Of a stretch of DNA of 64,000 bases, positions 2,283 through 56,765 are shown piece after piece; position 1 is the stretch's first letter, and every line of letters begins with the position of its first letter. The stretch covers positions 1-64,000 of IMG/VR virus record IMGVR_UViG_3300042540_001822; one strand, given 5' to 3'. The position numbers were made by a program, and so were the translations under genes. The notes under the pieces are model-generated. The model searched no databases. It had not been told where the DNA came from and saw only the letters and a list, made by a program, of their open reading frames with translations.

Positions 2283-3431
2283 TTAATAAATCCCAAGATC
2301 CTCGAAGTCTGACATCATTTCTGTGTCACTTACCTCTTGATCAGTTAATTGAATTTTTTTCATCAATCTTTTGACAGCTGGATTTTGCATAATCGGATCT
2401 TTCCAAATTGGGGATAAGGCAAAAGATTTACCTTGAAGTGCCTGTGGTGAAATTGAATTTCTGATTGGATCTCTTTGTGCCTTACTCATCCTTTGAAATT
2501 TTTCAGTTGTAATAAGGTAAAAATATGCTGCCGTCCAAGAATTAAATTTTACTGCGTCATTATAAACCTCTTTTAAAACAGATTCTGGCATAAGACATCT
2601 CTTGGCTGAATTAACGGAGCATCTTTTGTCTAAAGGTAAACCTTCTAAAGAATACAATTGAAAATTATCTTCACAAGTAATGTAATATCCATCTCTACCC
2701 GCAGCAGGTGCTCCGATTAGTGTTTTTAGATTGTTATATCCACATTTGAAAATACCTGTGCTATTAAAAACTTTAGGACCTCCTTCTAAAGTTGATAAAT
2801 TACAATCTTGAACTTCAAAATTACGTTTTACATCACAATTTTCCGAACCTTGAAGAGAAACAAGACTTTGAGTATTTCCCAATTCGAAATCCCTACCTAC
2901 GAAATCTGGACATCCTTCTAAATTCTGGATTTTGCTTTCCCTAACGCGGAAATCCAGTCCTACTTTTCTGGGCGAACCAATTAAAGATTCAAGTTCATTA
3001 GAATTCACTTTGAAATTCCTTTTAACCTCCGTTGGAAAACCAGAAAAAGAAACTACAGGAAAACTAACTTCAAAATCATTTTCAATTGTACCGAATACAA
3101 CTTCAGGAACTAATTTTCCATTTTTAAACAAATGATTTCGGGTTTCTGGATTATTGTAAATATTTACCCCACCCTGTACGTTGATAATTCCGTCTTCTAA
3201 CTCCCAACTTCCTGAACAGATTGAATCTAGAACTTTTACCAGTTCCTCCGAAAATCCTGAAGAATCAGTAAGTGGTATATTTAAAGCTTTGCATGCTTCT
3301 TCGAAATCTACCCCTTGATTTTTACAGAATTCCCTAATTCTTTCTTTCCAATTTCTTAATTCTCTACTAGTATAAGACTCGTTTAGTTCTAAAAGTTTGG
3401 AGTAAAAATCAAAATCTTTGATTAAATGCAT
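2283..3431 (-). CDS. LRR-like repeat protein (L.SL.G.P..V..DF repeats) with C-terminal DFEDLGIY motif
   Basis: Repeats such as LESLIGSPRKVGLDF and IQNLEGCPDFVGRDF; ATG 3431 lies downstream of GATATATA (3450-3457). Confidence 0.75.
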   Translation of the reverse strand: MHLIKDFDFYSKLLELNESYTSRELRNWKERIREFCKNQGVDFEEACKALNIPLTDSSGFSEELVKVLDSICSGSWELEDGIINVQGGVNIYNNPETRNHLFKNGKLVPEVVFGTIENDFEVSFPVVSFSGFPTEVKRNFKVNSNELESLIGSPRKVGLDFRVRESKIQNLEGCPDFVGRDFELGNTQSLVSLQGSENCDVKRNFEVQDCNLSTLEGGPKVFNSTGIFKCGYNNLKTLIGAPAAGRDGYYITCEDNFQLYSLEGLPLDKRCSVNSAKRCLMPESVLKEVYNDAVKFNSWTAAYFYLITTEKFQRMSKAQRDPIRNSISPQALQGKSFALSPIWKDPIMQNPAVKRLMKKIQLTDQEVSDTEMMSDFEDLGIY

Positions 3432-3478
3432 TGGAGATATTTTTTTAATTATATATCTCAAAAATTTTAAAATTCTAA

Positions 3479-3943
3479 TTAGAAGTCACCAGGTGCAACT
3501 TGAAAACAGGGAATTCCGTTTCTTCTCCACATAGCAACCACCTTATCTCGGTCGTCGTAAACACAAAGAAGATTTTGTTTATCTGGAAATTCCTGATTTA
3601 GCCATTCCTCTTTTAAAACATCATCCGCTGTGAACATTCTGGAACCAGTTGCGGGCCTCATGAGCAACTTATTGGGTCGAATACCGTACATATCCAGCCA
3701 TTTCTCGGTTTCTTCTCTTGTTGCCTCACTTCTTCCGGAAAAAATAACCATGTTGAATCCAGCCTTTTGGAGGGATTTAAAAGATTCGATCACCGGAATG
3801 TTTGGTTTGTCCAAAGAAATGTTATTTGGATCGAAAAATTTAGGCCAATCAATTTTACCGCTGTCTTTTGTGGCCAGGGTTCTTCTTTCTCTGATGTCGG
3901 CCAATGTGCCGTCCAGGTCAAAGATAATTGTTTTATTTGTCAT
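3479..3943 (-). CDS. HAD 3'-phosphatase, T4 PseT/PNKP phosphatase-domain-like
   Basis: IIFDLDGTLAD, SGR, DDVLKE, VYDDRDKVVAMWRRNGIPCFQVAPGDF motifs. Confidence 0.85.
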   Translation of the reverse strand: MTNKTIIFDLDGTLADIRERRTLATKDSGKIDWPKFFDPNNISLDKPNIPVIESFKSLQKAGFNMVIFSGRSEATREETEKWLDMYGIRPNKLLMRPATGSRMFTADDVLKEEWLNQEFPDKQNLLCVYDDRDKVVAMWRRNGIPCFQVAPGDF

Positions 3944-4154
3944 TTGATTTTTGAGTTGGTACTCTAAGTATGATGAGAACAAGAATTGCTCCTAGGAAAG
4001 ATTTAAAGGTATAAACCACGTCAAAACCCATCCAATCCAAACCAAGCAAAAGTAGAAATGGAATGGCGAGGAAAATTGCTAGAACAAAGAAAATTACGAA
4101 ACTTGTGGCCCCTGCCGATGTTAATTTTCTGTTTAGTTTTTGAAGATCTGTCAT
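3933..4154 (-). CDS. small membrane protein
   Basis: Two hydrophobic segments; overlaps the next gene. Confidence 0.65.
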   Translation of the reverse strand: MTDLQKLNRKLTSAGATSFVIFFVLAIFLAIPFLLLLGLDWMGFDVVYTFKSFLGAILVLIILRVPTQKSNDK

Positions 4155-4173
4155 GTAGTTGAATTATTTTGAT

Positions 4174-4419
4174 TTAAAATTGTTCTTCCTCCCAGTATTT
4201 CACACCTGGTTCAGAACTGGCCCACACCTGTTTTCCATCTATGTCGATTCTGATGATGTTGTCCTTGAACTCAACCTTGGAAATGTAATTCTGTGGGCTC
4301 TTTATGTTGTCATAAACGTAAACCATTCCATCGTGACAGAAAAGTTTAACTACCGAACCTCCGGGTTGATGACTCAAAGGATTAGTTCTGTATTCATCTT
4401 GAACTTTGATTTCTTTCAT
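4174..4419 (-). CDS. hypothetical protein
   Basis: ORF in a tightly packed minus-strand run. Confidence 0.7.
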   Translation of the reverse strand: MKEIKVQDEYRTNPLSHQPGGSVVKLFCHDGMVYVYDNIKSPQNYISKVEFKDNIIRIDIDGKQVWASSEPGVKYWEEEQF

Positions 4420-4481
4420 GTTTAAATTTTTCGCTAAAGTAAGGCAGAAATTAGGTATTTTCTAATTTTTTAAAAAAAAAT

Positions 4482-4742
4482 TTATCGGTATTTTTTGAAC
4501 ATTTTCTCTATTTCAACCCAAGAAATCATTTTTCCACTCAAAACCCTCATGGTTAATAAAAAGTCCTCCGGATGTAAATTAAATTCACCTAGGTTGTGCC
4601 CTATAGATAGGTCCTTAGACATATGAATTTTTCTGGTTTTGATCGACTGCTGTCTAGCTATTCTGGAATTTTTTCTACTCAAACTATCCCTTCGTTGGCG
4701 TTCCCTCCAAACTAGAAATTGTCTTTTCCATGACGTCATCAA
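4482..4742 (-). CDS. hypothetical protein
   Basis: ORF in the same run. Confidence 0.55.
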   Translation of the reverse strand: MMTSWKRQFLVWRERQRRDSLSRKNSRIARQQSIKTRKIHMSKDLSIGHNLGEFNLHPEDFLLTMRVLSGKMISWVEIEKMFKKYR

Positions 4743-4750
4743 TCTTTTAT

Positions 4751-5952: not shown

Positions 5953-6696
5953 TTATCCTATTTTTTCCCCTTCCCTCGTGAATTTATAATCCATCGAATC
6001 CATCCATTCGATTACAGCCTTATCTGAATTGATTGAACCATACTCTGCTTCTAATTCAGAATACAGTTCTCTAGATTTTTGTCTGGCCCATTTGGTTATG
6101 GAATCAGCCAAACTACCCAACCAATTGTCAAATTCTTTCTGCTCACTGGCATTGAAATTCCGTCCTTCCATGGGTTCTTCTACATCTATCTCTGCACTAA
6201 TTGTAAATTCATGATAATAGCGTGAACTATTTCTTTCGATGTTAATCCAAAAATCGTCAGGTGTTAAAGGGATAATTTTAGAATTGATTCCTAGCTCTTC
6301 GAATCCAGAAATCATAGCATCAATTTCGTCTTCTTCTTCTTTTTCTTCTTTTTCTTCTCCATAAGCAAACCACTTTACAGGTTGCAATTTAAGAGCTTCT
6401 TTAAAAAACTTTCCAACGTCTCTAACTCTGGCAGTGAAAGATGCACCATCTCCTTGAGACCAAAAACCGGAAAAATTACATTCAATATTTTCTAAACCCA
6501 ATTCCTCTAATCCGGATTTAAAATTTTCAATCACATCTTCGTACCACCAGGAATCTATCTTATCCCGGTATTCTTCTTTATAATTGGATAAAACCTTTTC
6601 CTGAATTTCCGGGGATAATTCATCGAATGAAAATTCTTGATTCTCTTCGTCAGATTCGAATAAACTGAAGTTCGAAAAGGGAATAATAAACCTCAT
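5953..6696 (-). CDS. acidic hypothetical protein with internal IDAMISGFEELGI motif
   Basis: N-terminus MRFIIPFSNFSLFE; GATATATA at 6701-6708. Confidence 0.75.
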   Translation of the reverse strand: MRFIIPFSNFSLFESDEENQEFSFDELSPEIQEKVLSNYKEEYRDKIDSWWYEDVIENFKSGLEELGLENIECNFSGFWSQGDGASFTARVRDVGKFFKEALKLQPVKWFAYGEEKEEKEEEDEIDAMISGFEELGINSKIIPLTPDDFWINIERNSSRYYHEFTISAEIDVEEPMEGRNFNASEQKEFDNWLGSLADSITKWARQKSRELYSELEAEYGSINSDKAVIEWMDSMDYKFTREGEKIG

Positions 6697-6713
6697 CCCT
6701 TATATATCTTTGA

Positions 6714-11260: not shown

Positions 11261-11809
11261 TTAATTATTTTCTTCGTAGGATTTGATTGAATCTAGATTT
11301 TTGCCCACTAGAGTCATCAATTGTTGATTAACCTTTTTTAGGTTATCTATTATTTCATCCAATCTCATGTTATTTCTATAAACTTCGATGTGGTACATTT
11401 CCTGTTTTTTTGAAGATGAATTTCTACCCAATACATAAACCCCTTTAATATCAAATTGAGAAGAATCAGAGACTTCCCCAGAATCGTCTTGTTTGTTCAT
11501 AAGGTCAATTACTTCTTGAAAACTAAAGGTTCCATTTTTGATGGATTGAAAAATTTCTTCTCTCTCCTCTTCATCTATGTATTCATCAATTAAATCCTCG
11601 TCATAATAATTGAAAATTAAACCTGCTGCCTCTGATCTGGTGTGGGCTACACAAACAAATAAAAATCTGTCCAAGTCTCCTCCACAATTCGACTCCATGT
11701 CTAGCACCCAAGATTCTAAAGGTTGGTAAATTCCTAAATCTTCAAATCCAGAAATTAAATCTTCGATATCTTCGTTTTCAAATGTAATGAAATTTTTAAT
11801 GTTTTTCAT
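11261..11809 (-). CDS. acidic GFEDLG-motif protein
   Basis: MKNIKNFITFENEDIEDLISGFEDLGIY. Confidence 0.75.
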   Translation of the reverse strand: MKNIKNFITFENEDIEDLISGFEDLGIYQPLESWVLDMESNCGGDLDRFLFVCVAHTRSEAAGLIFNYYDEDLIDEYIDEEEREEIFQSIKNGTFSFQEVIDLMNKQDDSGEVSDSSQFDIKGVYVLGRNSSSKKQEMYHIEVYRNNMRLDEIIDNLKKVNQQLMTLVGKNLDSIKSYEENN

Positions 11810-11836: not shown

Positions 11837-12517
11837 CTAAAAAATTCCCAAATCAGAAAATCCAGAAAATAGTTCTAGTTCATCGTCAAAACCAGGTGGT
11901 ATATTTATTTTTGCTTTAATGGGAGCAAAATCAGGCCAGTTCAAAACGGGGGCAATGATATGTATTCCTTGCGCAGGAAAAAATTCAAATAATTTATTCC
12001 AACAATCTGGATTCAAAAAAGAAGAAGTTTCAAGAGCTTTCTTTACATTCCCACATGCTGTAGTCCCACATGCTGTCTTAGACTCCAAAAGAACGTCTTT
12101 GGCATTCCAATCCTTACCTTTTTTGTCTATGTCTTTAGACTTAAAAGACCACCCGACAGAAAATGGCGACCCTGAATAATTTTCAAGTGGATTATCATCA
12201 ACATTGAATTTCTTTTTTACAAAAAAAGGAAATCCAGTTAGGTCTTTGAAATCGTTACTATAGGCATGGAAACTGCCTGAGACCTTTCCAAATTTTAGAC
12301 CGTGGGGAATCGCTTTTAATCTTTGAAATGAACAATCAAAATCTCCTTCTACGTTAATTAATTTTGATTTCGGATCTTGAGACCAAGACCCCTTGGTGCA
12401 TTTATTTAACCAATCCTTGAATGGATTGGGCAGTTCGTAAAACTCTTCACCTGCATCATTCGTGGACCAATCGTAATCTGATTCTTTGAAGAGTTTGAAA
12501 TTTTGAAGGTACTTCAT
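11837..12517 (-). CDS. LRR-like repeat protein with C-terminal GFSDLGIF motif
   Basis: MKYLQNFKLFKE; DLTGFP..V...F repeats; paralog of 2283 and 19794. Confidence 0.75.
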   Translation of the reverse strand: MKYLQNFKLFKESDYDWSTNDAGEEFYELPNPFKDWLNKCTKGSWSQDPKSKLINVEGDFDCSFQRLKAIPHGLKFGKVSGSFHAYSNDFKDLTGFPFFVKKKFNVDDNPLENYSGSPFSVGWSFKSKDIDKKGKDWNAKDVLLESKTACGTTACGNVKKALETSSFLNPDCWNKLFEFFPAQGIHIIAPVLNWPDFAPIKAKINIPPGFDDELELFSGFSDLGIF

Positions 12518-12528: not shown

Positions 12529-13017
12529 TTATGTTTGTGGAAACTTGATTAAATCTGCCATTCCAAATCCAAATTCATTTTTAATTTTTCGATCTGCCTC
12601 GAGAAATTGTTCGATCGAATTTAAATTAAAACTGCTCTCAAATCCATCTGACCCTGGTTTGGGATGGTCAATGATCCAAAAATTATCGATGGTATACTCT
12701 TTGGCAAACCTATGACTAGTCATGAGATAACCCAAATTATAGGAATCAAACTTTTCTTCGGAAAATTCAGATAAAATTTCTTCTATCTCAGATTTTTCAA
12801 ACTCTGCGTTATATAAAAAACTTTCTACAATTTCAAATGAAGAATTCCCTTCGATAATAAGAAGTTCACCCGAATGATTATATTCCTCTTGCACATAATA
12901 TTCAATGAATGCCAATTTTTTAACCTTATTTATTCCAAGTTCTTCAAATCCGGCAATCATGGAATCAATGTCAGATTCAGAAATCAAAAAACTCTGGATA
13001 TTTTGGAGATGCTTCAT
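12529..13017 (-). CDS. acidic GFEELG-motif protein
   Basis: MKHLQNIQSFLISESDIDSMIAGFEELGI; C-terminus FGFGMADL shared with 24346. Confidence 0.75.
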   Translation of the reverse strand: MKHLQNIQSFLISESDIDSMIAGFEELGINKVKKLAFIEYYVQEEYNHSGELLIIEGNSSFEIVESFLYNAEFEKSEIEEILSEFSEEKFDSYNLGYLMTSHRFAKEYTIDNFWIIDHPKPGSDGFESSFNLNSIEQFLEADRKIKNEFGFGMADLIKFPQT

Positions 13018-13036: not shown

Positions 13037-13048
13037 GATATATATATC
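13037..13048. promoter_or_regulatory. palindromic GATATATATATC, putative bidirectional late promoter
   Basis: Lies between divergent genes 13017(-) and 13068(+); each strand reads GATATATA. Confidence 0.6.
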
Positions 13049-13067: not shown

Positions 13068-13394
13068 ATGCGACATTTGGTTATTTATGAGTCTTGGTCC
13101 CAAGAGAAAACGATAGTTTTAGAATCTATCCGAAATCGTGCTAGAATTATTTTGAGCGTTCAGGCGGGCAGAATTCAAACAATAGATAATCCTAGGGGGA
13201 TTAGATTCCCTTGGTCTGAAGGCCAGACTTTAAACAGAAGTCTAGAAACTTGGGCTTGCAACAACGGGTTTACCATCAATGGAAAAGATCCATGTCCAGA
13301 AGAAAAAATATTTGGTATTAAAACCTCGGATATCCCAAAAGGTCACGAATGGAGAATGATGTTTCCGAATAAATTTAAAAAAACTAATTATTAA
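13068..13394 (+). CDS. hypothetical protein
   Basis: MRHLVIYESW N-terminus. Confidence 0.7.
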   Translation: MRHLVIYESWSQEKTIVLESIRNRARIILSVQAGRIQTIDNPRGIRFPWSEGQTLNRSLETWACNNGFTINGKDPCPEEKIFGIKTSDIPKGHEWRMMFPNKFKKTNY

Positions 13395-14920: not shown

Positions 14921-15026
14921 AATTATGGTTTTTAATTCAATGTCCGATAATTACCACGGAAAATAAAGCCATGAAATATTTTTAATTTTTTTTCCAAGAT
15001 ATATAATTAAAAATTAGAATTTTAAA

Positions 15027-15485
15027 ATGAAAAATGTGATCAGATACGAAGACTTTGATGCCAATTCAAAACAAAGTATCCAAGAGTCTTTTTTTGGTTC
15101 AAATAAACCAAAACTTGGTTCTCTCCAGCCATACAAAAGACCAGGTATGCTCCAACAAATGACACGCAAGGCAAAAAGCTTTGTTGGTATAGAAAACAAA
15201 CAGGATCGGGAGAACTTCGAAAAGTTGATCACTGCACTGATGAATCCCCCTTACCCAGATTTTATCAGGGGAATCAAGGATGAAACTGGTTCTGACGGGG
15301 TGACCGCCATGGTGGCCTACACAGATATGGGAAATTTATTGGTTAGATGTGACGATAAAGATCCTATGATTTCTTTCAAAGGAAGAAATTTAGATTTAGC
15401 TGATTTAGAGGAAGAGTGTGAACGACTAGTCAGTCTTCTGAAATTAGAGGCAGAAGACCACGGTCCATATCCTAATTTTCACTAA
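15027..15485 (+). CDS. hypothetical protein with CTS-like N-terminus
   Basis: MKNVIRYEDF...IQE; GATATATA at 14998-15005. Confidence 0.7.
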   Translation: MKNVIRYEDFDANSKQSIQESFFGSNKPKLGSLQPYKRPGMLQQMTRKAKSFVGIENKQDRENFEKLITALMNPPYPDFIRGIKDETGSDGVTAMVAYTDMGNLLVRCDDKDPMISFKGRNLDLADLEEECERLVSLLKLEAEDHGPYPNFH

Positions 15486-18919: not shown

Positions 18920-19432
18920 TTATCTCCGGGGACTTTTTGTGTCTCCCAGAATTTTTTTCACCATGCCATACACATCCCCATATTTGTCCATTGTTTGAAG
19001 TGTTTCTTCGTCCTTAATATCACAGTCTCGCAAATGAACTTTTTCCCCATTCAAGGGCTTAAAAAAAACTTTTAAAATACCTCTTCCCCTTTTGATATCT
19101 ACGTATGGTGAATATAAATATTCAACTTCTATAATGATATTACCCTTCAAATAAAATTCTAAAGAAAAATCACTTTCTCCTGCACGGCCTGTGACTCTAA
19201 TTACCTTTTCCCCCGTAGATTCTTCGATTTGTTTTTCAACATATCCCACCATTGAATTTTTATCATTCTCTGAGTTGAATTTATCCCAAATTTCAACTTC
19301 TGGATAAGGTGGGGGTTTTTGGTTTACCCCCAGATCCTCGAACCCTGAAATTAAATCATCAATTTCGTTTTGATTTGGAATTTCGTTTTCTTTAATTAAC
19401 CTTAAATCTTCGAATTTAAAAAGATGTTTCAT
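18920..19432 (-). CDS. GFEDLG-motif protein
   Basis: MKHLFKFEDL...EIDDLISGFEDLGV. Confidence 0.75.
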   Translation of the reverse strand: MKHLFKFEDLRLIKENEIPNQNEIDDLISGFEDLGVNQKPPPYPEVEIWDKFNSENDKNSMVGYVEKQIEESTGEKVIRVTGRAGESDFSLEFYLKGNIIIEVEYLYSPYVDIKRGRGILKVFFKPLNGEKVHLRDCDIKDEETLQTMDKYGDVYGMVKKILGDTKSPRR

Positions 19433-19467: not shown

Positions 19468-19779
19468 CTATTCATAGCGATCGTCAAAAACTTTTTGTGC
19501 GAATTTCTCATCAAATTCTTTTAACTCTGATGGTGTTAGATCCTCACCATTTAAATATTTAGCATTCGTAATCCAAAATTTAAAAAATCCGTCATAATCT
19601 AAGCCTTCGACCTCGAGTTCAATGGAATCATCACTCACCCATTTGCCCTTGAAATACAAATCTTTAGGACCCGGTTTGGGATTAATCCCTAGCACCTCGA
19701 ATCCTGTAAGCATACCATCTAGTTCATCCTCTATATTCTCTTTTAAATTGAAATCTTCAAATTTAAAAAGATGTTTCAT
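19468..19779 (-). CDS. GFEVLG-motif protein
   Basis: MKHLFKFEDF...ELDGMLTGFEVLGI; AATATATA at 19784-19791. Confidence 0.75.
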   Translation of the reverse strand: MKHLFKFEDFNLKENIEDELDGMLTGFEVLGINPKPGPKDLYFKGKWVSDDSIELEVEGLDYDGFFKFWITNAKYLNGEDLTPSELKEFDEKFAQKVFDDRYE

Positions 19780-19793
19780 GTGTTATATATTTT

Positions 19794-20984
19794 CTAAAAC
19801 AACCCTAGCTCGTCAAATCCCGAGAACAAATCAAATTGGTCTTCGTATTCTGGTGGAATCTTTATTCCGGCTTTCACCTTCGGATCTAGATACTTCCAGA
19901 TAGGAGCCAACATGTGAACCGTCTTGCCCGGGTCCCGTTGGAATTCCTTGTTAAACCAGAGACTAGAAAGATAGGGCAAAGTCCCCATCATTTTTTTTGC
20001 ATCTGGATTTCCCTCCTTTAAAACTTCTAACCAACCGTTCACATCCCACTTGGCATCAAACCAATAGCCGGGTTTCTGATTTTTCATAAAATCCAATGTT
20101 CCTTTGGTTGTCAACACAAAATCATCAGAAATAACATCGCCTTGAACATGAAAAGGAGCCCCTTCCAGGCTTTTTAAAAGGATATTTTCTTCAAAGCGAA
20201 AATCTCCACCTATTTCCGAAGGAGAACCTCTTAGATTTTCAATCTTATTCCATGAACAGTGAAAATTTTTATCTACTGTGCGGGGAAACCCCATTCCGTC
20301 CATGGTGGTGAGATTTAAACCCGAAGCATCAAAATTGCCTTTCACATGGCCAAATTTGATGCCATTTTTGGCAGGTAAAGATGAAATATTTCGGTACGAT
20401 GGATGATGAATCTTATTTGATAAATTCACATCCCCATCCACATCGACCTCGCCGGTTCTGGAATTATAAATCCAGGTTTGAGGTTTTCCATTCTTAGTTT
20501 TACAAACAGATTCTAAAAATTTTAATTGTTGCGTAGTCAGGTTAGGATGTGGAGTTGAAAAAAATAAAGAGTCTTCTTCATCCCTAATTTTTTTAATTTC
20601 TGCCAAAATCGCCTGGTCCTCTGGACTTGGTTTGCGGCCAATTTTTTTTAGCCATCTGGAAAAATAACGTTCAATAAGATAAAAAAACATGGTGTCTATG
20701 TCTTCTTGTCCAAAAGTAGCAGATATTCCTGATTTTGGGGTTCTAACATAGCCTGCCTTGGTCAGGTGAAATCTTTTGCCATCCGGGGCTTCTACAACAA
20801 AGGTATCTTTTTGAACGTAGGGCGATTTTGAAACCTCTGAGAATCCCATTTGAGACAGAATATTCCATCTCGGAGAGTCTTCCAGTCGCAAAGGCCACGT
20901 TTTTAATTTTGGGGTTCTGACCGAAATTTTCCCGAAATCCTCCTGAAGTAAATTAAAATTTTTGAAATTTTGAAGATATTTCAT
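19794..20984 (-). CDS. LRR-like repeat protein with C-terminal GFDELGLF motif
   Basis: IENLRGSPSEIGGDF, LKSLEGAPFHVQGD; GATATATA at 21004-21011. Confidence 0.75.
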   Translation of the reverse strand: MKYLQNFKNFNLLQEDFGKISVRTPKLKTWPLRLEDSPRWNILSQMGFSEVSKSPYVQKDTFVVEAPDGKRFHLTKAGYVRTPKSGISATFGQEDIDTMFFYLIERYFSRWLKKIGRKPSPEDQAILAEIKKIRDEEDSLFFSTPHPNLTTQQLKFLESVCKTKNGKPQTWIYNSRTGEVDVDGDVNLSNKIHHPSYRNISSLPAKNGIKFGHVKGNFDASGLNLTTMDGMGFPRTVDKNFHCSWNKIENLRGSPSEIGGDFRFEENILLKSLEGAPFHVQGDVISDDFVLTTKGTLDFMKNQKPGYWFDAKWDVNGWLEVLKEGNPDAKKMMGTLPYLSSLWFNKEFQRDPGKTVHMLAPIWKYLDPKVKAGIKIPPEYEDQFDLFSGFDELGLF

Positions 20985-21046
20985 TCTTCGATTGAATTTC
21001 TTGTATATATCTTATTTAGCCAATTAAAATGACTAAATTAAAAATT

Positions 21047-24345: not shown

Positions 24346-24894
24346 TTACACTTTCCTTTTGGGCATTTTGTTTAAATCTGCCAATCCAAATCCAAAATTG
24401 CTTTTCAGTTCTTCATCCGTATCGACGGCTCCGTTCACTCCAACAAGACTCGTGTACACATAGCAGTTAGGATTAAATTTTTTGGATGTGGGCCAATCGA
24501 TGACCCATTCGGCATCCACTTCAAATTCTCCTTCGTCTTCCAAGATTTGACATAATTGATACCACGTGAAATCTTTTTGGCCCTGAAAATTCTTTTCTAA
24601 TTTTTTAATTTGAGATTCCTGGTTTTTTTGGAATTGCTCGAAATCCACGTCATACCCTAAAATAAAACTAACAGCCTTAAAGACAACTGGAAAAATATCC
24701 GTCTCGTCCGTCGGGATGGCGAGCAAAAAGCAACTGTGATCATTGTGTTCATAGGAAGTATATGTGATTTCCCCCACATAAATTTGAGGTTTTTGATTGA
24801 TGCCCAAGTCTTCAAATCCTTGAACGAGAGAATCCAAATCAAATTCTCCAAATTCCGATTCAAAAATCGATTTTAAAAGGGTGAGTCTTGGCAT
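24346..24894 (-). CDS. acidic GFEDLG-motif protein, paralog of 12529
   Basis: LDSLVQGFEDLGI; WVIDWP; FGFGLADL. Confidence 0.75.
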   Translation of the reverse strand: MPRLTLLKSIFESEFGEFDLDSLVQGFEDLGINQKPQIYVGEITYTSYEHNDHSCFLLAIPTDETDIFPVVFKAVSFILGYDVDFEQFQKNQESQIKKLEKNFQGQKDFTWYQLCQILEDEGEFEVDAEWVIDWPTSKKFNPNCYVYTSLVGVNGAVDTDEELKSNFGFGLADLNKMPKRKV

Positions 24895-24979
24895 AAAATT
24901 TAAAAAGTAATTTTACATTATATATTCTTTTTGCAAAATGAATTGATTGTTTATATCAAATTGGCTTTGCAATTTTCCG

Positions 24980-25462
24980 TCAATCCATTTCCCACATAGA
25001 CTCGTGAAAAGCCCTGATAAGGTCATCTACATTTCTTATTTTTACCAATTGATCTTCATCGTATTCGTCATCAAACATGTAGATTTGCCGATGTTCTTTT
25101 TCCTCTGGGGTAAGCTTGTAGGCAAAGGTCTGACCCCCGATATTGACAAAAGCAAGAACATGGATGGGCAAAACTTTTGAAAAATCCCCATCATAATCAT
25201 CTGCATAACCGCTATCGAGCCATCTATCATCGTCTTGTGGGTTTTGCCAAACCAGAAATGGAGTCTCTGGGTCTTTTCGATCTATGGTCAGAGAAAAGGG
25301 TTTTTTATTTATACCCAATTCTTCAAACCCAGTAATTAAATCATCAATTTCTGTGTTGTTTGTTGTTTGATCTTTTTGGTTCATCTGTTTCTCCATTTGT
25401 GCCACCATATGATCCAAGTTGTGAGAGAAATCAAATGATTCGAATAATTTAATGTGTCGCAT
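24980..25462 (-). CDS. GFEELG-motif protein
   Basis: MRHIKLFESF...EIDDLITGFEELGI. Confidence 0.75.
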   Translation of the reverse strand: MRHIKLFESFDFSHNLDHMVAQMEKQMNQKDQTTNNTEIDDLITGFEELGINKKPFSLTIDRKDPETPFLVWQNPQDDDRWLDSGYADDYDGDFSKVLPIHVLAFVNIGGQTFAYKLTPEEKEHRQIYMFDDEYDEDQLVKIRNVDDLIRAFHESMWEMD

Positions 25463-25940: not shown

Positions 25941-25999
25941 AACATTGATTGATTTTTAGAATATATATCTAAATGAAACATTAATGTATCCCAGGAACG

Positions 26000-39340: not shown

Positions 39341-39382
39341 CTTCGTAAATTGTTTTTAGTATATATTAAAAAGAAAACCTAA

Positions 39383-40284: not shown

Positions 40285-40416
40285 AGTTTTATCTTTATAT
40301 ATTAAATCTCAGAACTAAATGTTTTGAAGAAACTTTATGGGCAATGCTAATAATCAGATGTCTTAACAAAATTATACATTTAACATTCTACTTCATTTAA
40401 ATCCGATATAACTCGA

Positions 40417-40671
40417 TTTACTCTGCCCTACTTGACTTCATCTTAGACTTCACCATAGACTCTGCCCTAGACTTCACCATAGACTCTGCCCTAGACTTCA
40501 CCATAGACTCTGCCCTAGACTTCACCATAGACTTCACCATAGACTTCACCATAGACTCTGCCCTAGACTCTGCCCTAGACTTCACCATAGACTCTGCCCT
40601 AGACTTCACCATAGACTCTGCCCTAGACTTCACCATAGACTCTGCCCTAGACTTCACCATAGACTCTGCCC
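40417..40671. repeat. tandem array of two 12-bp units (TAGACTTCACCA x10, TAGACTCTGCCC x9)
   Basis: 19 perfect units at 40444-40671 plus degenerate leading copies. Confidence 0.95.
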
Positions 40672-41196: not shown

Positions 41197-41556
41197 TTAG
41201 TCTTCCCCCTCCTGGTCCATTGATTTTTTACGGTCCAGCCCTTCCAGCCCCCCAAACAACTTTTCCATCATTTTCATGACTTGGTCGTGATCGGATTTTT
41301 TCGTTGCGTGGATTTTCCCGAGGAAATAACCGGCCAGAAGAAGTTTCTTTTCGTAGCGTGACAGGGGACCAGGAACGTCCAGTTCTTCGTCCCGGATTTT
41401 CCTGCCAGATACGAGAATGGCTTCGGACAACTTGCTTTGACTTCGGAAAGATTGAATACAATCCTCCGCAAGTTGGTCGAAGTATTGTTCGGTGAGACCG
41501 AGGCCTCCGGAGATGGTCGAATCGTCGACCGGTGCGTCATGTGGATGCTGTGACAT
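41197..41556 (-). CDS. hypothetical protein, paralog of 51870
   Basis: MSQHPHDAP...SRYEKKLLLAGYF...MDQEGED. Confidence 0.75.
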   Translation of the reverse strand: MSQHPHDAPVDDSTISGGLGLTEQYFDQLAEDCIQSFRSQSKLSEAILVSGRKIRDEELDVPGPLSRYEKKLLLAGYFLGKIHATKKSDHDQVMKMMEKLFGGLEGLDRKKSMDQEGED

Positions 41557-47791: not shown

Positions 47792-48151
47792 TTATTGATT
47801 TTTTAATAAGGGATTTCCTAATGCAATACTTCTAAGTGCTAACATTGCGTTATTATACTGTTTTGCAGTCATTGTATTTTCATAGTCTCGAAATAAATAC
47901 TTCAAAACATATTTACATCTTTCTTCCAGTAAATCCTTTTCTTTGTCTAAATATTGTTTAGATCTGTTGTCTTCAATTACACCATTTGAATTCTCAAAGT
48001 AAATTTCCTCACCTTTAGAATCATATTCCCACTTTTCCCAATATCCACCTGAAATCTCAAAGTAAACTAGATTACCATTCGTGTCTTTAATTGCCAAGGA
48101 AGGATTGGCCTTAAAATCCCATTTGATTAGTTGTCCTACTGTTTGTTCCAT
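47792..48151 (-). CDS. dispersed member of the 21-aa repeat family, fused to a different C-terminus
   Basis: QLIKWDFK...YFEISGGYWEKWEYDSKG. Confidence 0.7.
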   Translation of the reverse strand: MEQTVGQLIKWDFKANPSLAIKDTNGNLVYFEISGGYWEKWEYDSKGEEIYFENSNGVIEDNRSKQYLDKEKDLLEERCKYVLKYLFRDYENTMTAKQYNNAMLALRSIALGNPLLKNQ

Positions 48152-50000: not shown

Positions 50001-50098
50001 TAGTCAGGACAGGATTCGAACCTGCACACCTCAGTGTTTTATAGTTCATCAACTATGCGTTTCCCAAATGATATGTCTACCAATTTCGCCACCTGACT
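50001..50098 (-). ncRNA. AGTCAGG-family tRNA-like element 1
   Basis: AGTCAGG…GCAGGTTCGAATCCTGTCCTGACTA; Leu-type D loop; no canonical anticodon arm. Confidence 0.8.
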
Positions 50099-50201: not shown

Positions 50202-50333
50202 TAGTCAGGACAGGACTCGAACCTGTGCCTTGAGACTGACCCCTTGCTGACCTTTAGGTATCCACATCCTACCAGACTTGATGTGATATTTCTTTATCTG
50301 GGGAGCTGCTCTAACCAACTGAGCTACCTGACT
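50202..50333 (-). ncRNA. AGTCAGG-family tRNA-like element 2 (132 nt)
   Basis: Class-I D arm GCTCAGTTGGTTAGAGC; long insert. Confidence 0.8.
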
Positions 50334-51869: not shown

Positions 51870-52220
51870 TTAGTCTTCCCCCTCCTGGTCCATTTCTTTT
51901 TTACGTTCAAGACCCCCAAACAAACCCCCCATCATTTTCTGAATTTCTTCTCGTTTGTTTTCGAATCCTGCGTGGATTTTTCCAACAAAATAACCTGCCA
52001 GAAGAAGTTTCTTTTCGTAACGTGTTAGGGAACCAGGAACATCCAGTTCCTCGGAACGAACAAAGTTACCACAGTCAAGAATGGTGTCAGAAACTGAATC
52101 ACATTTCTTAAAGGAATTCACACATTCCTTAGCCAATGAATCGAAACAGGAATCTGATAAACTGAGACCTCCGGAGATAGTTTTTGGGTAGAATGGTGCG
52201 TCATGCGGATGATTTGACAT
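51870..52220 (-). CDS. hypothetical protein, paralog of 41197
   Basis: MSNHPHDAP...TRYEKKLLLAGYF...MDQEGED. Confidence 0.75.
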   Translation of the reverse strand: MSNHPHDAPFYPKTISGGLSLSDSCFDSLAKECVNSFKKCDSVSDTILDCGNFVRSEELDVPGSLTRYEKKLLLAGYFVGKIHAGFENKREEIQKMMGGLFGGLERKKEMDQEGED

Positions 52221-52320: not shown

Positions 52321-52407
52321 TAGTCAGGACAGGATTCGAACCTGTGTTCAGGGACTCAAAGTAAGTAACCCTCTGAGTTTGAATGGCAATCTTTTCGCCA
52401 CCTGACT
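52321..52407 (-). ncRNA. AGTCAGG-family tRNA-like element 5
   Basis: Long ACTCAGAG/CTTTGAGT hairpin replaces the anticodon arm. Confidence 0.8.
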
Positions 52408-53340: not shown

Positions 53341-53342
53341 AG

Positions 53343-54072: not shown

Positions 54073-54122
54073 TCGAGAGTTTCGAACCTCTCAGGTACCA
54101 AGGTAATTAATCTTGGACTTTG

Positions 54123-54262: not shown

Positions 54263-54340
54263 CCGCTGTCTTCCCAGCTGTGTGGGTTTAGTATTGACTT
54301 ACCCGTCAATGACGAGCTCTTGCCCCAAACCAAGGCTAGG

Positions 54341-54436
54341 TAGTCAGGACAGGAATCGAACCTGTGAGTATAGGATTAGCGCTTAGCCTATACACATCTT
54401 ATTTCTAGAGTGCGTCTACCACTCCGCCACCTGACC
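54341..54436 (-). ncRNA. AGTCAGG-family tRNA-like element 10
   Basis: Leu-type D arm, 7-bp GTATAGG/CCTATAC variable arm, collapsed anticodon stem. Confidence 0.8.
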
Positions 54437-54655
54437 AAATAAAGGGACTGGTTACCCCTTAAGTACCGTTTTCCCGGTTGACGATCTTTCTGTTCACACC
54501 ATGCCACTTTTTTTAGGCATTACAGTGACTGGTTGTTCCCTACTCCAACTACCAGAAAGATCTCGTTGAAAGCAAGGCCGGGTCTAAAAATGGAAAGCAA
54601 TAACTTTCCAAATGAACCATTTTCCATTTTCAGTCTCCCGACTGAAGATGATGAT
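54437..54655 (-). ncRNA. candidate structured ncRNA
   Basis: 10-bp GATCTTTCTG/CAGAAAGATC; TGGAAAG/CTTTCCA; TTCAGTC/GACTGAA. Confidence 0.5.
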
Positions 54656-54687
54656 TTTTCCAAAATGTCAAAGAACAAAATCTTTAG

Positions 54688-54758
54688 TAGCGGGTGGGGG
54701 TAACGCTCCCCCTACACACCTTGGGTTATGAGCCCAGGCTGCTACTAAGCTACCCGCA
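54688..54758 (-). tRNA. divergent initiator-like tRNA(CAT)
   Basis: 1-72 mismatch, GGG/CCC in the anticodon stem, loop CTCATAA; T loop AGCGTTA and reduced D arm. Confidence 0.6.
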
Positions 54759-54770
54759 TAAATATCTATC

Positions 54771-55178
54771 TTACCACCATGAATCGTACCAAATTGTGAA
54801 TCCTTCCTTTAATGCCTGTGATGCCTTTTCTAGAAATTCAATGTCTTTCTCCTTCATTTCATCAGACGACTTACCAAAATTAAAACCTTCAGTAATGGGA
54901 AGTTCATCATCAATAACCAAAGCACCAATCCTATCTAAATCTTCCTGGGTAAGTTTGACAGGAGTACAGTTGAAATGATTTTCTTTACCTCCCTTTTCCC
55001 TGTAAATTTTTTCCATCAAACCATGAAGATTTGGATGGTTTCTCCAGTGAAAAAATTTTTCTGGTTTATGAATGGTTCCATCATTTTCCACAAGGAAATC
55101 TATTTCTTCATGGAAATCGACAGTGTTAGAAGGTTTGAATTCCTTCATTTTATAAACATACATATCTAATCCACCCAT
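54771..55178 (-). CDS. conserved phage hypothetical protein
   Basis: GLDMY...FHWRNHPNLHGLME...YDSWW. Confidence 0.8.
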   Translation of the reverse strand: MGGLDMYVYKMKEFKPSNTVDFHEEIDFLVENDGTIHKPEKFFHWRNHPNLHGLMEKIYREKGGKENHFNCTPVKLTQEDLDRIGALVIDDELPITEGFNFGKSSDEMKEKDIEFLEKASQALKEGFTIWYDSWW

Positions 55179-55274
55179 ACTTTGTTTTTGTTTTGTGAAA
55201 GCAAATTTATGTAAAGAATCGAAATTAAAAAAATTAAACCTCTGTTTTTAAACCGGAAAATTTCAAAAATGTTT

Positions 55275-55475
55275 CTACTTTTTTTTCAGTAATCCAAATA
55301 AAACAATTACACCCAAAACAAAAAAAGCAAATTGTGAAAAGGAAATCCCAGACTCAATTCCTGCCAATTCTGTTAATAGCCAGTAGAAAAATCCAATTAC
55401 TAAAATATTCCACAATAAAATTAGTAGTCCTGCTAGAACTACTAATTTAATGAAACAGCCAATCAAATCACTCAT
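55275..55475 (-). CDS. small membrane protein
   Basis: Two TM segments. Confidence 0.6.
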   Translation of the reverse strand: MSDLIGCFIKLVVLAGLLILLWNILVIGFFYWLLTELAGIESGISFSQFAFFVLGVIVLFGLLKKK

Positions 55476-55918
55476 TTGATTTCTCCTTTTCTGAAGTAAA
55501 ATGGGTTTTCCATTCCAGGTGATTTTTTGATTTTGTCCAACATGTGATTGTTGAATTCAATTGCAGATTCAAATTCTGGAACATTCAATTTTTCTGATTC
55601 CACCCATTCGAAGGGTAGAACCATCATTCTGGTTGCCAGTTGGGTTTTTTCCCAGAATTTGGTGACAACATTTTCCTGCTTTGAAAAACCATCAGCTGGA
55701 GAATTGAGGTAGGCATGAAGCTGAGATGGATTGTTGGGTTTGATGATTGCAAACATTCCTTTCATAACTCCATACATAGATTCATGAACCAAACCAACCA
55801 AAACCTTGTCTCCATTCTTGGCAAGTTCTCCAAGAAGCAATTCGATAGGGGTTGGTTGATAGGTTTGACCTGAATTGTCGTTGACAATTACTGTTTGTGG
55901 TTTTTGGTTTTTGTTCAT
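55472..55918 (-). CDS. hypothetical protein
   Basis: Promoter at 55941. Confidence 0.65.
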   Translation of the reverse strand: MNKNQKPQTVIVNDNSGQTYQPTPIELLLGELAKNGDKVLVGLVHESMYGVMKGMFAIIKPNNPSQLHAYLNSPADGFSKQENVVTKFWEKTQLATRMMVLPFEWVESEKLNVPEFESAIEFNNHMLDKIKKSPGMENPFYFRKGEIK

Positions 55919-55988
55919 AAGTGGTTGTTTTTAGTAAAAGCAAATGTACAATAATTCTTAGAAAAGTAAAAATGAAACCTCATTTTTT

Positions 55989-56765
55989 TCAAATCCCCAA
56001 TTCTGCAAAATCATGAATTGTTGTACCTACTTCCTCCCCAAATACTTCTTGAATAGTTTTTAGTTCCCCATATGGAATATCCATATTATAAACAGAGATG
56101 CTATAATAAAATTCCCGATCTTCTTTGAATCCCATCTCATAAGTGAATGAATTGATTTTTTTCTCGGGTTTACTTTGGTATCTCTTCCACAATTTAAATT
56201 TGGGGTTTAGAGGTTCAACCCTCACATATTTGGAACCAGCTGAAACAACTTTAAAAACATCTCCAAGTTCATATCTTGGTCTGTAAGAATCTTTGGAAAT
56301 TAAACACAATGACCCAACCTTAAATTTCTCTTTTGCTGATTGTATTTTAGTATTCAATACTTTGTCGATTGGTAAAAAAATAATACTGTTAGCAGAAATC
56401 GTAACATTTACATTTGGTTCATCCACCAAATAACCTTTAACACACAAATTCGATTTACTTCTCACACACATTTTATACCCGTGTTTGGAAAAAGAGGGAG
56501 AGTTAATTTGAATTATTTCACCTGGTTTTACTAATTTGTAATTGATAGCACCAATGATATTTTGATTAATTTCAGTTCTAGTAGCAACAAAATACTCTTG
56601 ATAACCATACACAATTTTAGGAATCTCTAATTTTACATCTTCCATCAGAATTTCCAAAATATGGGGCGCATAACCATAGATAGCAGGTAATTCTGCTTCA
56701 AATTTTTCCCTTGTAGGTTCAAACCTAACAATGTTACGTGCTAATGAAAGTCTAGTTCTAGGCAT
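55989..56765 (-). CDS. hypothetical protein with weak C-terminal DFAELGI motif
   Basis: ORF track. Confidence 0.7.
   Translation of the reverse strand: MPRTRLSLARNIVRFEPTREKFEAELPAIYGYAPHILEILMEDVKLEIPKIVYGYQEYFVATRTEINQNIIGAINYKLVKPGEIIQINSPSFSKHGYKMCVRSKSNLCVKGYLVDEPNVNVTISANSIIFLPIDKVLNTKIQSAKEKFKVGSLCLISKDSYRPRYELGDVFKVVSAGSKYVRVEPLNPKFKLWKRYQSKPEKKINSFTYEMGFKEDREFYYSISVYNMDIPYGELKTIQEVFGEEVGTTIHDFAELGI

What the first reader, a model, noticed from the sequence alone, without database searches (positions are those of the whole stretch)
2286..56020. Portable GFEDLG peptide motif shared by about 11 otherwise diverse proteins
D-x-[LM]-[IFLVM]-x-[GD]-F-x-[DEV]-L-G-[IVL] occurs in ORFs 2283, 5953, 11261, 11837, 12529, 18920, 19468, 19794, 24346, 24980 and weakly in 55989. 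It sits near the N-terminus (11261, 12529, 18920, 19468, 24346, 24980), as the last about 10 residues (2283, 11837, 19794, 55989) or internally (5953). Codons differ between copies, so selection acts on the peptide. The host proteins belong to at least three folds. It looks like an amphipathic docking helix, a sorting tag for a shared partner such as a head, ejection or host complex. I know no named motif like it.
Basis: partly seen in the sequence, partly recalled or inferred. Interest (0 to 1): 0.82.

Follow-up and report, generated by a model that had tools for sequence, protein, structure and literature searches.

The report
Shared peptide tag in huge phage
A large uncultured freshwater phage puts the same short helical peptide, a shared N-terminal leader and a shared upstream DNA signal on dozens of otherwise unrelated proteins; this looks like an address label for one common partner, possibly the phage head, but the partner has not been identified.

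Summary
The motif is real. Eleven copies of [GD]-F-x-[DEV]-L-G-[ILV] lie on the minus strand, against 0.045 expected by chance. The eleventh, in the ORF at 55989, is weak.

The window understates the motif. In 119 kb of the source contig (IMG/VR, 219 kb), 37-38 of 211 genes carry it. They fall into about ten unrelated families. It is invariant where the protein bodies share only 25-35% identity. Its codons are scrambled between copies. AlphaFold2 predicts it as an amphipathic helix.

It is portable. The ORF at 5953 belongs to a widespread phage family, and only this copy has the motif, as a roughly 30-residue insertion.

Two more features travel with it:
- An N-terminal leader, M-K-H-[LI]-x-x-F-x-x-[FY]-E, that resembles the T4 capsid targeting sequence.
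- A DNA element, GATATATAA, 3-24 nt upstream of the start codon.

Neither the solved-structure sequences (PDB) nor the GTDB species-representative genomes contain the motif, and no Pfam family covers the carrier proteins. Among 1.84 billion representative proteins, only about 20 clusters carry it, apparently all from this lineage.

My best reading (0.4) is a docking helix for one shared partner, most likely part of a head-cargo tag. The partner is untested. I found no head genes in the roughly 190 kb of a sister contig that I examined.

The parts
25310..25345 (-). Motif copy, N-type, in ORF 24980-25462 (160 aa); residues 40-51, DDLITGFEELGI
   Evidence: The N-terminal leader MRHIKLFESF lies at 25433-25462. 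A degenerate second copy lies near the C-terminus.
24799..24834 (-). Motif copy, N-type, in ORF 24346-24894 (182 aa, family B)
   Evidence: AlphaFold2 predicts the motif as helix 20-29, after leader helix 2-15 and before an alpha/beta body.
19800..19835 (-). Motif copy, C-type; last residues of ORF 19794-20984 (396 aa, leucine-rich-repeat family A), ending GFDELGLF-stop
19684..19719 (-). Motif copy, N-type, in ORF 19468-19779 (103 aa); variant GFEVLGI
19325..19360 (-). Motif copy, N-type, in ORF 18920-19432 (170 aa)
   Evidence: Orthologs at 73-80% identity keep both the leader and the motif.
12931..12966 (-). Motif copy, N-type, in ORF 12529-13017 (162 aa, family B)
11843..11878 (-). Motif copy, C-type; tail of ORF 11837-12517 (226 aa, family A), ending GFSDLGIF-stop
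11729..11764 (-). Motif copy, N-type, in ORF 11261-11809 (182 aa; distant member of family B)
6286..6321 (-). Motif copy inside a lineage-specific insertion of about 30 residues in ORF 5953-6696 (247 aa, phrog_5162 family)
   Evidence: Five phage homologs lack both this insertion and the N-terminal extension.
2289..2324 (-). Motif copy, C-type; tail of ORF 2283-3431 (382 aa from the ATG; divergent family A), ending DFEDLGIY-stop
55992..56027 (-). Weak, uncertain copy; the last residues DFAELGI of ORF 55989-56765 (258 aa)
   Evidence: It fails the leave-one-out HMM. It has no leader and no upstream element.
61616..62122 (-). ORF with the N-terminal leader (MKHIKLFENF) and the upstream element, but no motif
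62177..62551 (-). ORF with the N-terminal leader (MKHVELFENF) and the upstream element, but no motif
15027..15485 (+). ORF with the N-terminal leader (MKNVIRYEDF) and the upstream element, but no motif
3449..3457 (-). GATATATAA element 18 nt upstream of the ATG at 3431
6700..6708 (-). GATATATAA element, 3 intervening nt before the ATG of ORF 5953-6696
13040..13048 (-). GATATATAT element 23 nt upstream of ORF 12529-13017. A divergent partner at 13037-13045 on the + strand precedes ORF 13068-13394.
14998..15006 (+). GATATATAA element 21 nt upstream of ORF 15027-15485
19783..19791 (-). AATATATAA element, 3 intervening nt before the ATG of ORF 19468-19779
21003..21011 (-). GATATATAC element 19 nt upstream of ORF 19794-20984
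24918..24926 (-). AATATATAA element 24 nt upstream of ORF 24346-24894
62138..62146 (-). GATATATAA element 16 nt upstream of ORF 61616-62122
62566..62574 (-). GATATATAA element 15 nt upstream of ORF 62177-62551
63939..63947 (-). GATATATAA element directly after a terminator-like hairpin, 3 intervening nt before the ATG of ORF 63618-63935

Best explanation
The motif, [DE]-x-[LM]-[ILF]-x-G-F-x-[DE]-L-G-[ILV], is a portable amphipathic helix of about 12 residues with an L-G cap. This phage lineage has grafted it onto the N-terminal region, a surface loop or the C-terminus of many unrelated proteins so that all of them bind one shared partner.

The motif is one part of a composite tag. The carrier proteins also begin with a leader, M-K-H-[LI]-x-x-F-x-x-[FY]-E-[AS], that resembles the T4 capsid targeting sequence, including a hydrophobic-x-Glu site of the kind prohead proteases cut. 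Their genes are preceded by a dedicated promoter-like element, GATATATAA.

The mechanism I think most likely has three steps. The genes are switched on together. The leader takes the proteins into the assembling head core and is then cut off. The motif, now at or near a free end, is the handle that holds the cargo on a head-internal partner, or on a first target after ejection. On this reading the set is a large, diversified arsenal of delivered proteins: leucine-rich-repeat binders, a relative of a protein annotated as a YeeU-like antitoxin, and small alpha/beta proteins.

Shown here: the reality of the motif, its portability, purifying selection on the peptide, its predicted helical state, and its co-occurrence with the leader and the DNA element.

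Inferred: that a shared partner exists, what it is, that the proteins are packaged, and that the leader is cleaved.
For: Enrichment: 11 copies against 0.045 expected, with a clean HMM separation.

Genome-wide: 37 of 211 genes by the first pattern, 38 with a slightly relaxed one, in 14 BLAST clusters that merge into about 10 families.

Portability:
- The ORF at 5953 differs from five phage homologs by an N-terminal leader extension and a motif-bearing insertion of about 30 residues flanked by acidic and proline-containing linkers.
- Leucine-rich-repeat homologs in other huge phages and in a Vibrio phage lack the tail.

Selection:
- In family B (25-35% identity) the only invariant columns are G, F, E, L, G and I of the motif.
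- In 81 family A sequences the terminal G-[LI]-F is invariant.
- Synonymous sites are scrambled.
- Orthologs at 73-80% identity keep the leader and the motif.

Structure: the motif is helical in both AlphaFold2 models, and the family A leader (residues 1-14) has pLDDT below 50, meaning it is not part of the fold.

Composite tag:
- Leader against motif: odds ratio 43, p=8e-17.
- DNA element against leader: odds ratio 20, p=1e-10.
- A hydrophobic-x-E-[SANGT] site within residues 6-22 occurs in 32 of 38 tagged genes and 21 of 173 untagged genes.
- A distant relative from another sample keeps terminator, GATATATAA, ATG, leader and motif together.

T4 parallel:
- T4 IPII and IPIII begin MKTYQEFIAE-A.
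- T4 internal proteins are diverse apart from a conserved targeting sequence (PMC3012670).
- Prohead proteases of T4 and giant phages cut after Glu (PMC5694885).
- The phage's topoisomerase II large subunit is closest to T4-type gp39.
- The DNA element also precedes a tail-fibre-like gene (Mtd_N domain) and a glycoside hydrolase family 19 (GH19) gene with a peptidoglycan-binding domain.
Against: - No partner was tested, and no virion or expression data exist. The two RNA-labelled runs held only low-depth fragments that are probably DNA.
- No head, protease or scaffold gene was seen in about 190 kb of the sister contig. So I could not check that the DNA element is a late promoter or that a T4-type protease exists.
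- In family A the motif helix is modelled at pLDDT about 90, which suggests it packs on its own C-domain rather than waiting for a partner.
- Similar N-termini (M-K-x-K-x-F...E) are common in other large phages and may have a more general meaning.
- The association statistics are inflated by paralogy: 20 of the carriers belong to one family.
- Forty or more cargo species would be unusually many.
Confidence: 0.4

Rival explanations
1. The motif docks onto a hub inside the infected cell. It attaches variable binding modules, such as the leucine-rich-repeat proteins, to one phage or host machine. Candidates are the phage ClpB-like AAA+ protein, its MoxR/VWA system or DnaJ, or a host hub such as a protease, RNA polymerase or the sliding clamp. 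This would work like F-box or PRANC adaptors in eukaryotic systems.
For: - The architecture is a repeat domain followed by a short conserved terminal peptide, expanded into 20 or more paralogs.
- The invariant free terminus G-[LI]-F resembles peptides that bind through a free C-terminus. That resemblance rests on my own knowledge.
- The genome encodes a 678-residue ClpB-like AAA+ protein, a MoxR ATPase with VWA partners, and DnaJ.
- Placement at the N-terminus, C-terminus or internally is typical of hub-binding motifs.
Against: - The bacterial clamp consensus needs Gln at position 1, and no copy has it.
- No bacterial protein family among GTDB species representatives carries the motif, so it does not mimic a common host motif.
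- This reading does not explain the targeting-sequence-like leader or its Glu site.
- No partner was tested.
Confidence: 0.25
2. The motif acts within or between the tagged proteins themselves. It is a capping helix that packs on the protein's own body or on the leader helix, or it mediates self-association among tagged proteins. On this reading there is no separate partner.
For: - The family A model places the helix (residues 192-203) at pLDDT about 90 within a confident C-domain.
- In the ORF at 24346 the leader and the motif are modelled as two consecutive helices.
- The ORF at 24980 has a second, degenerate copy at its C-terminus (p<0.001).
Against: - A helix with invariant G-F-x-x-L-G is unlikely to fit about ten unrelated bodies.
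- In family B the motif is more conserved than the body it would pack on.
- In the ORF at 5953 it sits in an inserted loop with acidic and proline-containing linkers.
- The second-copy pattern is not general. The other N-type proteins are weaker than the ORF at 24980 (p 0.03 or higher, mostly above 0.15).
- The family A leader is disordered and is not paired with the tail.
Confidence: 0.17
3. The motif is a recognition and cleavage site for a maturation protease. G-F-E followed by an acidic residue resembles the [S/A/G]-x-E sites of giant-phage prohead proteases. On this reading the N-type leader region is a propeptide that is removed.
For: - G-F-E is invariant in all 16 N-type and internal copies.
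- Giant-phage proteases cut after Glu at A/S/G-x-E, and their propeptides often hold several sites (PMC5694885).
Against: - C-type copies mostly read G-F-D-E, G-F-S-D or G-F-N-E. Cutting five residues from a C-terminus has no obvious purpose.
- The invariant residues are F, L and G, not Glu.
- The conserved span of about 12 residues is longer than known sites.
Confidence: 0.1
4. The motif has no function of its own. It is a passenger of paralogy or of a mobile promoter-and-leader cassette that spreads by recombination within the genome.
For: - Half the copies belong to one family.
- The DNA element and the leader lie directly at gene boundaries in tandem arrays, where recombination could copy them.
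Against: - Synonymous sites are near saturation while the peptide stays invariant.
- The motif is the best conserved part of family B.
- It occurs at N-terminal, internal and C-terminal positions in about ten families.
- It is kept in divergent relatives.
Confidence: 0.03

Closest known systems
Capsid targeting sequence (CTS) of phage T4 internal proteins (IPI-III, Alt)
   Same: - It is a short conserved peptide shared by otherwise highly diverse proteins of one phage.
- It is an add-on to the proteins rather than part of a fold.
- T4's MKTYQEFIAE-A resembles the leader found here, M-K-H-[LI]-Q-x-F-x-[LI]-[FY]-E-[AS].
- The carriers are variable accessory proteins (PMC3012670).
   Different: - The GFEDLG motif is not at the extreme N-terminus. 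It lies 20-50 residues in, in a loop, or at the C-terminus, and it has no sequence likeness to the CTS.
- The tag here is composite: leader, helix and DNA element.
- Packaging and cleavage are untested.
- There are many more carriers, at least 38.
N-terminal propeptides and Glu-specific cleavage sites of giant phages (phiKZ, 201phi2-1, SPN3US)
   Same: - Leader regions are conserved between diverged paralogs.
- Cleavage follows small-residue-x-Glu.
- Propeptides carry multiple candidate sites (PMC5694885).
- G-F-E is invariant in the N-type copies.
   Different: - C-terminal copies do not keep the Glu in register.
- No protease gene was found in the DNA examined.
- The conserved span is longer and more helix-like than a cleavage site.
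Encapsulation peptides of bacterial microcompartments and cargo-loading peptides of encapsulins (from my own knowledge)
   Same: - They are short terminal or inter-domain peptides joined by flexible linkers. The microcompartment peptides are amphipathic helices.
- They sit at the N- or C-terminus of unrelated cargo proteins.
- They bind the inside of a protein shell. Encapsulin shells share the HK97 fold with phage capsids.
   Different: - No microcompartment shell or encapsulin gene was seen.
- Those peptides conserve a pattern rather than a sequence, whereas here the sequence is nearly invariant.
- A shell partner is only a hypothesis.
Sliding-clamp binding motifs (bacterial QL[SD]LF or QLxLxL; T4 gp45-binding C-terminal tails) (from my own knowledge)
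   Same: - They are portable and occur at the N-terminus, C-terminus or internally on unrelated proteins.
- The family A tail E-L-G-L-F-COOH resembles the C-terminus Q-L-G-L-F that I recall for E. coli Pol II.
   Different: - The defining Gln is absent in all copies.
- N-type copies end in N-x-K-P, without the final aromatic residue.
- The carriers are not replication or repair proteins.
F-box and poxvirus ankyrin-PRANC adaptors (from my own knowledge)
   Same: They combine an expanded family of repeat-domain binders with one short conserved terminal docking element that links them to a common machine.
   Different: - There is no sequence or fold relation.
- Those are eukaryotic ubiquitin-system elements.
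- This is only a functional analogy for the hub-docking rival.

Membership tests
T4-type capsid targeting sequence | Lies at the extreme N-terminus, about 10-20 residues directly after the initiator Met | tested here: not met
   The GFEDLG motif starts at residue 21-45 (position of the conserved Gly), is internal (residue 131 of the ORF at 5953; residue 487 of a 643-residue protein), or forms the last 8 residues. The separate N-terminal leader does meet this feature.
T4-type capsid targeting sequence | Sequence like MKTYQEFIAE, ending in a hydrophobic-x-Glu cleavage site | tested here: inconclusive
   The motif has no likeness. The co-occurring leader resembles it: in family A, M and K are always present, F7 is invariant and E11 occurs in 67 of 68 sequences, followed by A or S. 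This is a resemblance only. Similar N-termini occur in other large phages.
T4-type capsid targeting sequence | Removed by the prohead protease, and sufficient to load a foreign protein into the head | not testable with these tools
   This needs virion mass spectrometry and fusion experiments.
T4-type capsid targeting sequence | The phage has a T4-type prohead protease and a scaffold core | tested here: inconclusive
   I walked about 190 kb of the 231-kb sister contig and saw no head genes or protease family. The contig is probably an incomplete genome.
Giant-phage prohead protease site ([S/A/G]-x-E) | A small residue, any residue, then Glu at a fixed place in every copy | tested here: not met
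   This is met in 16 of 16 N-type and internal copies (G-F-E). It fails in most C-type copies, which read G-F-D, G-F-S or G-F-N.
Bacterial beta-clamp binding motif | Gln at position 1 of QL[SD]LF or QLxLxL | tested here: not met
   The residue before L-G is D, E or V in all 37 copies and never Q.
Encapsulation or cargo-loading peptide | A short terminal peptide (an amphipathic helix in microcompartment cargo) joined to unrelated cargo proteins by flexible linkers | tested here: met
   The motif is helical in both AlphaFold2 models. It has acidic low-complexity flanks upstream and N-x-K-P or proline flanks downstream. There are about ten carrier families.
Encapsulation or cargo-loading peptide | A shell protein that binds the peptide | not tested
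   No shell or capsid gene was available, and there was no co-folding tool.
Any described protein family or solved peptide | A significant match of the motif or leader module outside this lineage | tested here: not met
   - Pfam and PHROGs: no family covers the motif.
- Profile search of solved-structure sequences (PDB): best E-value is 1.
- 1.84 billion representative proteins: 21 hits, of which 20 appear to come from this phage lineage (by sequence likeness) and 1 is spurious.
- GTDB genomes: 23 heterogeneous chance hits.

The most novel reading that the evidence does not exclude
The phage uses a two-part protein address code. The first part is a cleavable leader like the T4 capsid targeting sequence. 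The second is a retained GFEDLG handle. Both are driven by their own promoter-like element. Together they load several dozen diversified binder and effector proteins into its head and deliver them to the host with the DNA. In effect this would be a phage secretion signal serving an arsenal far larger than the three to four internal proteins of T4.
Probability: 0.25. Interest if true: 0.88.

Novelty: new variant of a known kind. Interest (0 to 1): 0.66.

Why it matters
If the tag is an address label, it identifies in one step a whole class of proteins in an uncultured huge phage. These make up about 18% of the genes in the DNA I examined, and all but one family otherwise have no annotation. The tag would say that they act together, either as delivered cargo or as adaptors on one hub.

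It would also give a short, transplantable peptide for loading or docking proteins in a new phage lineage.

It would extend the targeting-sequence idea from T4 to a composite code with N-terminal, internal and C-terminal placements.

Finally, the linked DNA element gives a handle on gene regulation, possibly through leaderless transcripts, in phages of hosts that do not use Shine-Dalgarno sequences.

Tried and rejected
- Near-identity search of the region against cultured and deposited phages found no match.
- Pfam and PHROGs scans of all carrier proteins found nothing except phrog_5162 for the ORF at 5953.
- A word-based protein search with the motif region found only close orthologs.
- A motif profile against solved-structure sequences gave only chance C-terminal helices at E of 1 or more.
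- ESM Atlas look-alikes for the ORF at 24346 gave unnamed clusters only.
- Foldseek of both models against solved structures (PDB), and of the family A model against the viral predicted-structure library, gave only weak leucine-rich-repeat matches for family A and nothing for family B.
- DNA-pattern scans of IMG/VR returned the motif only from the source contig, plus chance hits and one unrelated small-protein family with K-L-V-R-GFEELGVN. I rejected that family as related: it has a different composition, a basic flank, and the octapeptide is part of a globular fold.
- A scan of GTDB genomes gave chance hits only.
- Clamp-binding reading: the motif fails on the missing Gln. The phage Y-family polymerase shows no informative motif.
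- The idea that all N-type proteins carry a second C-terminal copy holds clearly only for the ORF at 24980.
- I walked the sister contig from 18 to 112 kb and from 134 to 210 kb looking for head genes, to test whether the DNA element is a late promoter. I found none.
- RNA evidence: two RNA-labelled runs held only low-depth fragments of relatives, probably DNA, with no transcript ends.

Full report
OBSERVATION

The pattern [GD]-F-x-[DEV]-L-G-[ILV] occurs 11 times in six-frame translation.

Shuffling residues within all open segments gives 0.045 matches on average and never more than one. A small HMM of the motif scores the 11 copies at 18-30 bits and nothing else above 7 bits. The invariant Leu is written with six different codons and the second Gly with four. 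Third-position identity at identical residues averages 0.47.

One copy is doubtful. The ORF at 55989 is not found by an HMM built without it, and it lacks the other shared features described below.

EXTENT

The window is part of IMG/VR contig UViG_3300042540_001822 (219,475 bp). Degenerate DNA patterns for the motif pulled five more pieces of that contig out of IMG/VR, each with further copies.

In the 119 kb I could read, 37 of 211 crude gene calls carry the motif. With one more variant (E-F-D-E-L-G-L-F) the count is 38.

- Twenty belong to family A. This family has 22-residue leucine-rich-type repeats and a conserved C-domain of about 85 residues that ends in F-E-L-F-S-G-F-D-E-L-G-L-F-stop.
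- Sixteen carry the motif 20-50 residues from the N-terminus or internally. After iterative comparison they fall into family B (seven members) and about eight singletons or small groups.

A near-identical 231-kb sister contig and many short metagenomic relatives exist.

ANATOMY

The N-type consensus is [DE]-[IL]-D-x-L-I-S-G-F-E-[DE]-L-G-I-N-x-K-P, with G, F, E, L and G invariant in 16 copies. C-type copies share [ED]-L-F-S-G-F-x-[ED]-L-G-[LI]-[FY]-stop. Across 81 family A sequences the terminal G and F are invariant.

Hydrophobic residues fall at positions i, i+1, i+4 and i+7, which is the spacing of one face of a helix. AlphaFold2 models support this.
- Family A (81-sequence alignment, pLDDT 91): the motif is helix 192-203 followed by L-G-L-F.
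- The ORF at 24346 (21 sequences, pLDDT 74): the motif is helix 20-29, between a leader helix and an alpha/beta body.

Flanks are acidic low-complexity sequence upstream and N-x-K-P or proline-containing sequence downstream.

PORTABILITY

The ORF at 5953 belongs to a family found in 207 deposited phage genomes. I aligned it with five of them: XaC1, 19-1-2, Av-05, K64-1 (where it is annotated as a YeeU-like antitoxin) and GAP32. The ORF at 5953 has exactly two additions. One is an N-terminal extension. The other is an insertion of about 30 residues that holds the motif between an acidic run and a proline-containing linker.

In family B the bodies share 25-35% identity, and the only invariant columns are those of the motif. 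Leucine-rich-repeat homologs in the huge phages LR756501 and LR756502 and in a Vibrio phage lack the tail.

First, nearly all carriers begin with M-[KR]-x-[LI]-x-x-F-x-x-[FY], usually followed by E-[AS]. A strict pattern matches 25 of 37 carriers and 8 of 174 other genes (odds ratio 43, p=8e-17). The extension added to the ORF at 5953 is this leader. In the family A model it is disordered, with pLDDT below 50.

Second, the 9-mer [AG]-ATATATA-[ACT], mostly GATATATAA, occurs 16 times in the window, and 14 of these lie 3-24 nt upstream of a start codon on the same strand. Across the 119 kb it is associated with the leader (odds ratio 20, p=1e-10). It sits between tandem genes and, in places, directly after terminator-like hairpins.

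A distant relative from a different sample keeps terminator, GATATATAA, 7 nt, ATG, leader and motif together.

These statistics are inflated by paralogy and should be read as qualitative.

THE GENOME

There is no close relative among deposited phages. The window holds accessory genes: a polynucleotide-kinase-type phosphatase, an FkbM methyltransferase, a family 16 glycosidase, a lysozyme, DUF932, VWA-like proteins, a Lar-like domain and one standard tRNA.

Elsewhere the contig has:
- a topoisomerase II large subunit closest to T4-type gp39 at 28-30% identity;
- DnaJ and a Y-family polymerase;
- a ClpB-like AAA+ protein and a MoxR ATPase;
- ribosomal protein S21 and a sigma-70 factor;
- glutamine synthetase and many glycosyltransferases.

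Three secreted proteins in the window have signal peptides ending in A-Q or S-Q, which is typical of Bacteroidota by my own knowledge. I saw no head or tail module in about 190 kb, so the contig is probably part of a larger genome.

MECHANISM

The conservation pattern argues for a binding function shared by all carriers: an invariant short helix on about ten unrelated bodies, placed at either end or in an inserted loop, and flanked by linkers.

The leader resembles the T4 capsid targeting sequence, MKTYQEFIAE-A, which I read from T4 itself. It ends in a hydrophobic-x-Glu site in 32 of 38 carriers against 21 of 173 other genes. T4 internal proteins are described as highly diverse apart from that sequence (PMC3012670). 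Prohead proteases of T4 and giant phages cut after Glu (PMC5694885).

I therefore favour, at 0.4, a composite cargo tag. The leader takes the protein into the prohead and is removed. The GFEDLG helix, then near a free end, is the handle for a shared partner.

The rivals are:
- docking on an intracellular hub (0.25);
- a cis-acting or self-associating helix (0.17), supported by the confident packing in the family A model and by a second degenerate copy in the ORF at 24980;
- a protease site (0.1), which fits the invariant G-F-E of N-type copies but not the C-type copies;
- a functionless passenger (0.03).

COMPARISON AND NOVELTY

- No Pfam or PHROG family covers the motif.
- A profile search of solved-structure sequences finds nothing better than E=1.
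- A scan of 185,579 species-representative genomes gives only heterogeneous chance hits.
- A profile of the leader plus motif finds 21 proteins among 1.84 billion representatives. Twenty appear, by sequence likeness, to come from this lineage, and one is a spurious repeat protein.

The kind of thing is known: a short targeting or docking peptide shared by diverse proteins of one virus or compartment. This sequence, its three placements, its pairing with a leader and a DNA element, and its scale are new. I rate it a new variant of a known kind.

LIMITS

There was no partner test, no virion or transcript data and no complete genome. Gene calls are crude (longest ATG ORFs). The family B model is of moderate confidence.

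Noticed in passing
window 3449-3457, 6700-6708, 13037-13048, 14998-15006, 19783-19791, 21003-21011, 24918-24926, 25961-25969, 39359-39367, 40295-40303, 62138-62146, 62566-62574, 63939-63947; also L047, L061, L084, L086, L088, L138: A promoter-like 9-mer, mostly GATATATAA, lies either 3-7 or 14-24 nt upstream of start codons of genes with the M-K-H-L..F leader. It sometimes follows a terminator hairpin directly. The short spacing suggests leaderless or nearly leaderless mRNAs. The phage encodes S21 and a sigma factor.
   Followed up: partly
window 50001-50098, 50202-50333, 52321-52407, 54341-54436 (all minus strand): Rfam finds four more full-length tRNA matches of unusual length (87-132 nt) that ARAGORN did not report. 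They may be tRNA genes with inserted sequences. They lie in a gene-poor stretch.
   Followed up: no
window 24995-25036 (minus strand): The ORF at 24980 carries a degenerate second copy of the motif helix near its C-terminus, V-D-D-L-I-R-A-F-H-E. It is significant against random windows (p<0.001). The other N-type proteins show at most weaker similarity (p 0.03 or higher, mostly above 0.15).
   Followed up: partly
L001-L081 (about 70 IMG/VR contigs, many around 60 kb): An unrelated small phage protein of about 92-105 residues, in contigs of 48-62% GC, contains the identical octapeptide GFEELGVN. There it is preceded by a basic K-L-V-R and lies inside a conserved globular sequence. This is probably coincidence or a common helix-cap shape.
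   Followed up: partly
L110, L111, L112 (huge phages LR756501 and LR756502; Vibrio phage TDDLMA): Similar N-termini (M-I-K-K-F-x-x-F-E, M-K-F-K-E-Y-L-N-E, and M-K-Y-L-R-N-F-K-N-F in LR756502) occur on many small proteins of other large phages. The leader type may therefore be much more widespread than the GFEDLG motif.
   Followed up: no
window 57054-57320, 57368-57943, 58419-59126 (minus strand): Three adjacent ORFs have N-terminal signal peptides ending in A-Q or S-Q. This is a Bacteroidota-like style and hints at the host phylum.
   Followed up: no
window 47792-48151, 59436-59747, 59744-59992, 60300-60674, 60671-60985 (minus strand): A separate paralog family starts M-T-I-A-Q-Q-I-K-W-D-F-K-T-N-G. 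Four copies are in tandem and one lies 12 kb away.
   Followed up: no
window 40418-40660 (minus strand): This ORF begins with four exact tandem repeats of the octapeptide M-V-K-S-R-A-E-S.
   Followed up: no
window 41197-41556 and 51870-52220 (minus strand): Two paralogous ORFs begin M-S-x-H-P-H-D-A-P and lie 10 kb apart. Both are next to gene-poor stretches.
   Followed up: no
L095, L104-L109, L136, L137 (sister contig, 18-210 kb): The gene content is unusual for a phage. There are more than a dozen glycosyltransferases of several families and a sugar-modification cluster (DegT, PglD). There are also glutamine synthetase, a ClpB-like AAA+ protein, MoxR plus VWA proteins, ribosomal protein S21 and Tad3. 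No structural genes were seen in about 190 kb.
   Followed up: partly
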